This document shows, piece after piece, positions 11,747-12,088 of a stretch of 64,000 nt of DNA. The position numbers were made by a program, and so were the translations under genes. Each line of letters begins with the position of its first letter. Positions within the stretch are counted from its first letter, which is position 1. The notes under the pieces are model-generated. The model was not told the origin of the DNA. It saw nothing but the letters and a program-made list of their open reading frames with translations, and did not search any database. Source of the DNA: Orbicella franksi (lineage: Eukaryota). The DNA lies in contig OZ116698.1 of the NCBI GenBank assembly GCA_964199315.1, positions 5,084,001-5,148,000 of the forward strand, given 5' to 3'.

Positions 11747-12088
11747 AGCGCCTGTTTTTATCAAGAACTTTTTGGTTTCTTCGTTTTGATTACACGCACT
11801 GAAGTCTTTGGTCTCTTTCCCTAGTCCTGGTCGCCTTTGTTGGATGTACTGAGCTATTATATTTTTAACCAGTCTTTCATTTCCCGCTTTTAGTGCATGT
11901 TAATGTTTTAAACCGTGTCTATTGTCTTTTGTCTTTTTATGGTGGGGCGGGGTTCGACTACCTGGCAAAGTTGGCGAGCCAGCCTCTTATGAGGGTGCTC
12001 CCCCTCCTTGGTGGTACTTTTTCATCTATGCCTCTATGGTCGGTGGACATTGCACTGCGTCCATCGTACCGTCTTAAATACAAAAAAA

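What the first reader, a model, noticed from the sequence alone, without database searches (positions are those of the whole stretch)
12041..12066. Family B 3' end carries a near-perfect U1A/SNF-binding hairpin
Seen: CGGUGGAC-[AUUGCACUGC]-GUCCAUCG, an 8-bp stem (one G-U) with a 10-nt loop closed by C-G, about 10 nt before the tail. Established: U1A/U2B''/SNF RRMs bind AUUGCAC in a 10-nt loop with a C-G closing pair (U1 SL2), and U1A sites in the U1A mRNA 3'UTR inhibit polyadenylation. Inference: a U1-targeting element mimics U1 SL2, either to block polyadenylation and allow read-through or to link its RNP to U1 biogenesis sites.
Basis: partly seen in the sequence, partly recalled or inferred. 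Interest (0 to 1): 0.86.

Follow-up and report, generated by a model that had tools for sequence, protein, structure and literature searches.

The report
Retrotransposon tail mimics U1 protein-binding hairpin
Coral jumping genes that insert into U1 spliceosomal RNA genes keep, just before their tail, an RNA hairpin whose loop matches the spot on U1 RNA gripped by the host protein U1A/SNF, so they probably borrow that protein, though binding is untested.

Summary
The hairpin is real: CGGUGGAC-[AUUGCACUGC]-GUCCAUCG at 12041-12066, 22 nt before the end of the A-tail of a frameshifted Tx1/L1-like retrotransposon (family B). That element sits at nt 3/4 of a U1 snRNA gene.

I fetched about 95 related loci by protein homology, without using the UTR.
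- 31 of 33 complete 3'UTRs and 26 of 29 tail|U1 junctions carry the exact AUUGCAC.
- It is always preceded by the C of a closing C-G pair.
- Stems covary: 7 of 11 pairs have compensatory changes.
- The last three loop bases vary freely. These are the determinants that U1A-family RRMs read.

A sister clade (family C) and relatives at 35-38% identity keep C|AUUGCAC as an internal loop followed by a mini-hairpin.

Limits:
- Binding by the host protein is inferred, not shown.
- One U1-targeting lineage lacks the site, so it is not needed for target choice.
- There is only one canonical site per element, so the two-box polyadenylation-inhibition mechanism is not supported.
- RNA evidence is weak.

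No report of such a mimic turned up in the searchable literature. Earlier notes of this scan (s1-240374, s1-200542) describe the same mimic on neighbouring DNA of this genome.

The parts
12041..12066 (+). Family B 3'UTR hairpin: 8-bp stem (one G-U) and 10-nt loop AUUGCACUGC closed by C-G
   Evidence: homologous hairpins in 25 loci with covarying stems
12049..12055 (+). AUUGCAC heptamer, identical to the U1 stem-loop II loop core
   Evidence: exact in 31 of 33 complete 3'UTRs chosen by an anchor outside the hairpin
12038..12070 (+). Extended 11-bp helix: GGU/ACC added below the 8-bp stem, with U12067 bulged
   Evidence: 87.6% of cells paired against 30-55% for slid controls; 7 of 11 pairs with changes on both sides
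12071..12089 (+). Conserved terminal motif (G/C)CGYCUUAAAUAC plus the A-run 12082-12089, which is the element's 3' end
12090..12101 (+). U1 snRNA gene nt 4-15 remnant (CTTGCCTGACGC). It is the target-site duplication of the downstream family C insertion and the site into which B inserted
5788..12089 (+). Family B element: ORF1 remnant, APE endonuclease, reverse transcriptase, zf-RVT, 3'UTR. Frameshifted and not intact
11941..11984 (+). tRNA T-arm/D-loop-like module of the same 3'UTR. It is strongly conserved and served as the hairpin-independent anchor for the census
17718..17754 (+). Family C version of the site: outer helix closed by C-G, AUUGCAC (17726-17732) as a 5'-side internal loop, then the mini-hairpin UCCC-GUAA-GGGA
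   Evidence: outer helix 95% paired, 5 of 8 pairs compensatory, closing C-G in 18 of 18
41432..41468 (+). Second family C copy of the same site (AUUGCAC at 41440-41446)
17772..17935 (+). U1 snRNA gene carrying the family C insertion at nt 3/4; its own stem-loop II loop AUUGCACUUU is at 17836-17845
44926..45089 (+). Uninterrupted U1 snRNA gene; stem-loop II loop C[AUUGCACUUC]G at 44990-44999

Best explanation
The hairpin is a conserved cis-element of the RNA of a clade of coral Tx1/L1-like non-LTR retrotransposons that insert at nt 3/4 of U1 snRNA genes. It presents, near the 3' end of the element RNA, what the RRM1 of the host U1A/U2B''/SNF-family protein reads on U1 stem-loop II: single-stranded AUUGCAC stacked on a C-G closing pair, followed by a non-specific spacer. 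The most likely mechanism (inferred) is that the abundant nuclear host protein binds the element RNA there and becomes part of its RNP. That would give it 3'-end protection and/or nuclear import and routing into the snRNP pathway. The endonuclease, not the hairpin, picks the U1 site. The motif probably came from U1 itself, since read-through transcripts of these elements run into U1. Shown: presence, deep conservation, stem covariation, and a match to the U1A recognition code in two structural contexts. Inferred: binding and what it achieves.
For: Sequence and fold are confirmed.

Census independent of the hairpin: 31 of 33 complete 3'UTRs and 26 of 29 real A-tail|U1 junctions have the exact ATTGCAC 30-45 nt before the tail.

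B-type stems differ completely between lineages (GGUGGAC, GAUGGGC, CUCUGGGC, UUGAGGC, GGCAGGC, CGGCC) yet stay paired. 87.6% of cells pair against 30-55% when slid, and 7 of 11 pairs show compensatory change. The closing C-G never covaries. Loop bases 8-10 vary: UGC, UGA, CAC, CAA, UUC, UGG, UCC, UAC, CUU.

In C-type elements the outer helix is 95% paired, 5 of 8 pairs are compensatory, and the closing C-G is present in 18 of 18.

The two architectures map onto two sister clades of the C-terminal domain tree.

Relatives at 35-38% identity with otherwise unalignable UTRs (L088/L089, L096) still carry C|AUUGCAC in a closed helix before a tail in U1.

Relatives at 42-43% identity not seen in U1 (L086/87, L090-92) and the window's U2-targeting families lack it.

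The host's own U1 genes carry C[AUUGCACUUC/U]G.

Published recognition code: U1A contacts AUUGCAC and the closing C-G pair, selects that heptamer in loops of various sizes, and also binds it in an internal loop of its own pre-mRNA (PMC2203988). SNF uses the same U1 loop with a C:G closure (PMC5992148).
Against: There is no binding data.

One U1-targeting lineage (L094/L095) has no AUUGCAC in its 3'UTR, so the site is dispensable for at least some elements and for target choice.

LINE 3' stem-loops are classically read by the element's own reverse transcriptase, and these elements encode an ORF1 with RRM-like and CCHC parts. That could be the true reader.

Other blocks of the same UTR are equally conserved, so conservation alone does not single out a host factor.

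The negative controls are few and their targets are partly unknown.

RNA support is thin: 17 reads in one run, plus metatranscriptome contigs that may be DNA.
Confidence: 0.6

Rival explanations
1. The hairpin is the recognition stem-loop for the element's own proteins (ORF2p reverse transcriptase or the RRM/CCHC ORF1p), as in stringent-type LINEs. The U1-like loop is inherited from a captured U1 fragment, or from an ancestor that used the genuine U1 stem-loop II of read-through transcripts. No host U1A is involved.
For: The position 20-45 nt from the tail, the deep conservation and the covarying stem are what such recognition hairpins show. Short non-autonomous units in L096 share the tail region including the site with the LINE, as SINE/LINE partners do (PMC4494074). 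ORF1 has a weak RRM and a CCHC knuckle.
Against: The conserved features coincide with U1A's determinants: seven loop bases plus the C-G closure. The three 3' loop bases and the stem sequence are not conserved. The site tolerates conversion from hairpin loop to internal loop, both known U1A contexts. A different reader would not be expected to share this exact footprint. ORF1 shows no sequence similarity to U1A.
Confidence: 0.27
2. The site acts like the U1A pre-mRNA polyadenylation-inhibition element. Bound U1A blocks poly(A) polymerase at the element's weak AAUACA/AAUAUA signal, so transcripts stay unadenylated or read through into U1.
For: The site lies 20-35 nt upstream of AAUAC/AAUAU-type hexamers at the element end. 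The C-type internal-loop context resembles the boxes of that element.
Against: The known mechanism needs two boxes binding a U1A dimer. B-type elements have one site. The upstream hairpin of C-type has a non-canonical, variable loop (CUUGCAC, UUUGCAC, AUAGCAC, UAGUAUG) and is missing in L032, L049, L052, L080 and L082. Read evidence gave no 3'-end information.
Confidence: 0.1
3. The hairpin is a passive relic or a chance match: a U1 fragment or random hairpin that hitch-hikes in recently amplified copies and has no function.
For: The heptamer alone is not enriched in the window. The window has only one family B 3' end.
Against: It is conserved across clades down to 35% protein identity, with fully replaced but still complementary stems. 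No such hairpin arose in 400 simulated windows. There is no U1 similarity outside the loop.
Confidence: 0.02

Closest known systems
U1 snRNA stem-loop II, the binding site of U1A / SNF RRM1
   Same: A 10-nt loop beginning AUUGCAC, a C-G closing pair and a variable last three loop bases. The host's own U1 genes in the window carry C[AUUGCACUUC]G (PMC2203988, PMC5992148).
   Different: It sits in the 3'UTR of a retrotransposon RNA, not in an snRNA. The stem is unrelated in sequence to the U1 stem. In family C and in distant relatives the three spacer bases are replaced by a mini-hairpin.
Polyadenylation-inhibition element of the vertebrate U1A pre-mRNA 3'UTR
   Same: AUUGCAC is presented as an internal loop next to a C-G pair, in a 3'UTR shortly upstream of the 3' end. 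The C-type architecture is of this kind.
   Different: That element has two boxes that bind a cooperative U1A dimer. Here there is a single canonical site per element, and the RNA belongs to a mobile element.
3' stem-loops of stringent-type LINEs and their SINE partners (for example eel UnaL2/UnaSINE1), read by the element's reverse transcriptase
   Same: A conserved hairpin a few tens of nt from the tail, a covarying stem and an invariant loop. It is apparently shared with short non-autonomous units (L096).
   Different: The loop is identical to a host snRNP protein site and to the loop of the RNA whose gene the element targets. The reader protein is unknown.
Keno and other target-specific Tx1-clade elements (targets U2 snRNA, 5S rRNA, U5, microsatellites, transposons)
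   Same: APE + RT + zf-RVT architecture, ORF1 with RRM/CCHC, precise insertion into a multicopy small-RNA gene, and nested or tandem insertions (PMC4494074).
   Different: The target is U1 at nt 3/4. U1 is not among the Tx1 targets listed in the papers I could search. No host-protein-site mimic is described for those families.

Membership tests
U1A/U2B''/SNF RRM1 binding site | Unpaired heptamer AUUGCAC at the 5' side of the loop | tested here: met
   12049-12055. Exact in 31 of 33 UTRs and 26 of 29 U1 junctions.
U1A/U2B''/SNF RRM1 binding site | C-G base pair closing the loop directly 5' of A1 | tested here: met
   C12048-G12059. 21 of 25 B-type (the four exceptions are single-base decays) and 18 of 18 C-type; it never covaries.
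U1A/U2B''/SNF RRM1 binding site | The remaining loop bases act as a non-specific spacer (10-nt loop, or an internal loop) | tested here: met
   Loop bases 8-10 take at least 9 different triplets. There are three 11-nt loops. In C-type the spacer is replaced by a mini-hairpin.
U1A/U2B''/SNF RRM1 binding site | Actual high-affinity binding by the host protein | not testable with these tools
   Needs EMSA, ITC or CLIP. The host U1 genes keep the same loop. An earlier scan note reports an SNF/U1A gene in this genome (s1-253857), which I did not check.
U1A pre-mRNA polyadenylation-inhibition element | Two U1A boxes held by a helix so that a U1A dimer can inhibit poly(A) polymerase | tested here: not met
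   There is one canonical site per element. The C-type upstream hairpin loop is non-canonical and variable, and is absent in five lineages.
U1A pre-mRNA polyadenylation-inhibition element | Position shortly upstream of a polyadenylation signal | tested here: inconclusive
   Only variant hexamers (AAUACA, AAUAUA) lie at the element end. Read data gave no 3' ends.
Tx1-clade target-specific non-LTR retrotransposon | APE endonuclease + reverse transcriptase + C-terminal zinc-binding domain; ORF1 with RRM/CCHC | tested here: met
   Exo_endo_phos, RVT_1 and zf-RVT in family B. zf-CCHC and a weak RRM_1 in the ORF1 of intact relatives.
Tx1-clade target-specific non-LTR retrotransposon | Insertion at one defined position of a repeated target | tested here: met
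   25 of 40 distinct 3' junctions continue with U1 from nt 4. Target duplications cover nt 4 to 15-18. 15 junctions are off-target.
Tx1-clade target-specific non-LTR retrotransposon | Phylogenetic placement of the RT inside the Tx1 clade against reference families | not tested
   No Repbase reference sequences were available. The assignment rests on architecture and on the literature description (PMC4494074).
Stringent-type LINE 3' recognition stem-loop | Conserved stem-loop close to the 3' end, shared with non-autonomous partners | tested here: inconclusive
   The hairpin is conserved. Two ~300-370-nt units in L096 share the site with the LINE tail, but this is a single locus.
Stringent-type LINE 3' recognition stem-loop | Specific binding by the element's reverse transcriptase | not testable with these tools
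   Needs biochemical or retrotransposition assays.

The most novel reading that the evidence does not exclude
A whole clade of snRNA-gene-targeting retrotransposons uses the host U1A/SNF protein as an obligatory subunit of its RNP. By mimicking U1 stem-loop II, the element RNA is treated as an snRNP-like particle. It is then imported or routed to Cajal-body and snRNA-gene territories, where its endonuclease finds U1 (and in relatives U2) genes. This would be molecular mimicry of the target gene's own product to reach the target gene.
Probability: 0.25. Interest if true: 0.9.

Novelty: new variant of a known kind. Interest (0 to 1): 0.74.

Why it matters
Target-specific LINEs are models for safe, site-directed gene insertion, yet how their RNPs reach the nucleus and the target locus is mostly unknown.

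Here a host snRNP protein site is kept invariant for the whole history of a U1-targeting clade, in hairpin-loop and internal-loop form. That would be a clear case of a mobile element mimicking the product of its own target gene to recruit a host factor.

It is directly testable. The binding code of U1A is among the best understood in RNA biology. Point mutants with known effects exist, and coral cell lines and heterologous retrotransposition assays are available.

It also shows that the U1A recognition code is used outside snRNAs in a cnidarian.

Tried and rejected
- **Chance.** Rejected by simulation and by conservation across loci.
- **Ascertainment bias.** My hairpin alignments were chosen on ATTGCAC. 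I therefore repeated the census with two anchors that ignore the hairpin: the T-arm-like module and the tail|U1 junction.
- **Two-box polyadenylation-inhibition model.** I examined the upstream hairpin of family C. Its loop is not canonical and it is absent in several lineages.
- **ORF1 as a U1A-like protein.** I found no similarity to U1A in solved structures or Pfam, only CCHC and a weak RRM.
- **DNA-level promoter (PSE) mimic restoring the downstream U1.** The native U1 upstream region has no such motif, and stem covariation argues for an RNA-level role.
- **Captured U1 fragment.** There is no similarity to U1 beyond the loop.
- **Read laying on RNA runs.** It gave too few reads for 3'-end mapping. 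One run had none, and metatranscriptome contigs cannot be told from DNA.
- **Literature.** Four searches found no U1-targeting Tx1 family and no U1A-site mimic in a retrotransposon. The library lacks most subscription journals and Repbase Reports.
- **Host U1A/SNF gene.** I could not check it, because no tool-supplied query sequence was available.
- **P0001 contig look-up.** It found nothing.

Full report
**Observation**

The sequence CGGTGGAC-ATTGCACTGC-GTCCATCG is at 12041-12066 on the + strand and is unique in the window.
- It forms an 8-bp stem with one G-U pair.
- The loop is 10 nt, AUUGCAC plus UGC, closed by C12048-G12059.
- The helix continues with GGU (12038-12040) pairing to ACC (12068-12070) around a bulged U.
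- The hairpin appears in both the minimum-energy and centroid folds of the terminal 169 nt.
- The A-run is 12082-12089, so the hairpin ends 15 nt before it.

The heptamer alone is not enriched (13 found, 9.8 expected). A closed C[AUUGCAC N3-4]G hairpin with 8 contiguous pairs arose in 0 of 400 simulated windows, and one with 5 or more pairs in 7 of 400.

**Context**

The window is a coral snRNA/5S array.
- U1 genes are at 17772 and 44926.
- U2 genes are at 36132 and 52286, with a fragment at 44578.
- 5S genes are at 45976 and 54120.

Runs holding the sequence are labelled coral metagenome or coded coral organisms. One homologue is annotated from Stylophora.

Family B (about 5788-12089, + strand) is a frameshifted element with APE endonuclease, reverse transcriptase and zf-RVT domains. 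Its A-tail is followed by U1 nt 4-15 (12090-12101). Then comes a second element, family C (about 12102-17774), whose tail abuts U1 nt 4 of the gene at 17772. Both are therefore insertions at nt 3/4 of U1, with a target duplication of nt 4 to about 15. The window holds only one family B 3' end, because the second B copy is cut at 44604.

I searched with the C-terminal ORF of family B. From the hits I fetched contigs, and from an alignment of them 80 metagenome loci. None of these steps used the UTR.

Nearly every locus that reaches its 3' end has ATTGCAC 30-45 nt before the tail. My hairpin alignments were picked on that motif, so I repeated the census with two independent anchors:
- 31 of 33 UTRs anchored on the upstream T-arm-like module have the exact heptamer. 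The exceptions are L005, with UUUGCAC and no stem, and L037, which is cut inside the loop.
- 26 of 29 genuine A-tail|U1 junctions have it. The exceptions are L005, L083 with an internal deletion, and L094.

**Structure**

In 25 B-type hairpins the 11-bp helix is 87.6% paired, against 30-55% when partners are slid. Seven of 11 pairs have changes on both sides. No shuffle reached the observed covariation score.

Stems are entirely different between lineages: GGUGGAC, GAUGGGC, CUCUGGGC, UUGAGGC, GGCAGGC and CGGCC. By contrast, the closing C-G never covaries and the seven loop bases are invariant. Loop bases 8-10 take at least nine different triplets.

Family C and its relatives have an outer helix with these properties:
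- it is 95% paired;
- 5 of 8 pairs are compensatory;
- the closing C-G is present in 18 of 18.

AUUGCAC follows as a 5'-side internal loop, and then comes a mini-hairpin. In the joint alignment this site aligns with the B hairpin, the mini-hairpin taking the place of the three variable loop bases. By sequence, however, family C's upstream hairpin is the closer match to the B hairpin, so which of the two is the true homologue is uncertain.

A tree of the C-terminal domain splits the loci into two sister clades. Every copy whose 3' end could be typed is B-type in one clade and C-type in the other.

**Deeper relatives**

From an exhaustive representative search I fetched more distant families.

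| Loci | Identity | Target seen | C\|AUUGCAC site |
|---|---|---|---|
| L088/L089 (intact ORFs) | 38% | U1 nt 3/4 | present: AAUCC-AUUGCAC-A-CUCCCcaguGGGAG-C-GGAUU |
| L096 | 35% | U1 | present three times |
| L086/87 (has the T-arm module) | 42% | flank not U1 | absent |
| L090-92 | 43% | unknown | absent near the tail |
| L094/L095 | 40% | U1 nt 4 | absent |
| Window's U2-targeting families | distant | U2 | absent |

The rest of the L088/L089 UTR cannot be aligned to families B or C. Two of the three L096 sites belong to ~300-370-nt non-autonomous units lying between U1 pieces.

L094/L095 shows that the site is not required for choosing U1. That fits the established view that the endonuclease sets the target (PMC4494074).

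**Comparison with what is known**

U1A contacts the AUUGCAC bases and the closing C-G pair. It selects that heptamer in loops of different sizes, and it also binds it in an internal loop of its own pre-mRNA (PMC2203988). Drosophila SNF binds C[AUUGCACCUC]G in U1 (PMC5992148).

What is conserved here is exactly that footprint, in both known structural contexts. What varies (the stem sequence and the last three loop bases) is what U1A does not read. The host's own U1 genes carry the same loop.

This is why I favour host-protein binding (about 0.6) over recognition by the element's own proteins (about 0.27). The latter remains a serious rival for three reasons:
- LINE 3' hairpins are classically RT-recognition sites.
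- ORF1 carries RRM/CCHC parts, although it has no similarity to U1A.
- Short non-autonomous units share the tail.

The two-box polyadenylation-inhibition mechanism is not supported. There is one canonical site per element, and the upstream hairpin of family C is variable and often missing.

The link with U1 targeting may reflect opportunity as much as function, because read-through transcripts contain U1 and could have donated the loop.

**Expression**

Laying four RNA runs gave 17 reads in one poly(A) run, none in another, and contigs in two metatranscriptomes covering the UTR up to the tail. Loose ends lead into U1 or other flanks. This shows presence in RNA libraries but not transcription, and it gives no 3'-end information.

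**Novelty**

Four full-text searches found Tx1 targets U2, 5S, U5, microsatellites and transposons. They found no U1-targeting family and no retrotransposon mimic of a U1A site.

Earlier notes of this scan report the same mimic on neighbouring DNA of this genome (s1-240374, s1-200542). They also report stem-loop-II-like hairpins in the genome's SNF/U1A gene (s1-253857, not checked by me).

I class the finding as a new variant of known kinds: a LINE 3' hairpin that is also a U1A-type site.

Noticed in passing
window 11941-11984; also L086/L087 and most fetched loci: The 3'UTR carries a tRNA T-arm-like hairpin (GGGGUUCGACUCCCC) followed by a D-loop-like GAAGUUGG hairpin. These are among the most conserved blocks of the UTR. 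They are also present in a relative (L086/87) that lacks the AUUGCAC site and is not in U1.
   Followed up: partly
L094 2330-2424 and L095 (same insertion): A 40%-identical family ends TTAAATATAAAAAAAA|CTTACCTGACGCGGG in U1 but has no AUUGCAC anywhere in its 3'UTR. It carries a different hairpin there. This is a natural counter-example worth testing.
   Followed up: partly
L093 5290-5345: A U2-targeting relative (tail joined to GATCAAGT of U2) has a hairpin GACUCC-[UUGCACCACAU]-GGAGUC about 25 nt before its tail. That is a C-G-closed 11-nt loop lacking only the first A of the U1A heptamer.
   Followed up: partly
L096 3541-3860 and 3947-4316: Two short (~300-370 nt) non-autonomous units lie between U1 fragments. 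Each ends with a C|AUUGCAC site and a tail in U1. They look like SINE-type partners sharing the LINE's 3' module.
   Followed up: partly
window 36300-36320 and 52445-52465; L093 5486, L088 7083: The U2 stem-loop IV loop of this coral reads AUAGCACUACC. Other cnidarian loci have AUUGCACUACC, so U1 and U2 loops share the heptamer with C rather than the vertebrate G at position 7. This is compatible with a single dual-specificity SNF-like protein.
   Followed up: no
window 17680-17705; loci: Family C has an upstream long hairpin whose loop resembles the B hairpin (GGAC-UUGCACUGUA-UCC) but is degenerate (CUUGCAC, UUUGCAC, AUAGCAC, UAGUAUG). It is absent in five lineages.
   Followed up: yes
window 12090-12110, 41489-41510; L025, L026, L038, L043: Elements are often stacked head-to-tail: the tail, then U1 nt 4 to 15-20, then the 5' end of the next element (GTATGGCCGGAGGCCCTATCC). 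This implies repeated insertion into the duplicated target copy.
   Followed up: partly
one search list (for example L004, L006, L014, L016, L019, L033, L070): 15 of 40 distinct 3' junctions are not in U1. Most of these flanks begin with C. Targeting is therefore a strong preference rather than absolute.
   Followed up: partly
window 18886-18906: At a U2 (nt ~1-33)/element junction the sequence AGUGUC-[AUUGCACUC]-GGCACU can form a C-G-closed 9-nt loop with the same heptamer. It is a single instance and its conservation is unknown.
   Followed up: no
window 36132-36175 and 52286-52325: Two different Tx1-like families end inside U2 near the branch-point recognition region (AAAAAAAAA|TGAAAGTATCTG and TTAAAAA|TCTGTTCTTATC). 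Their 3'UTRs carry no AUUGCAC, so I used them as weak negative controls.
   Followed up: partly
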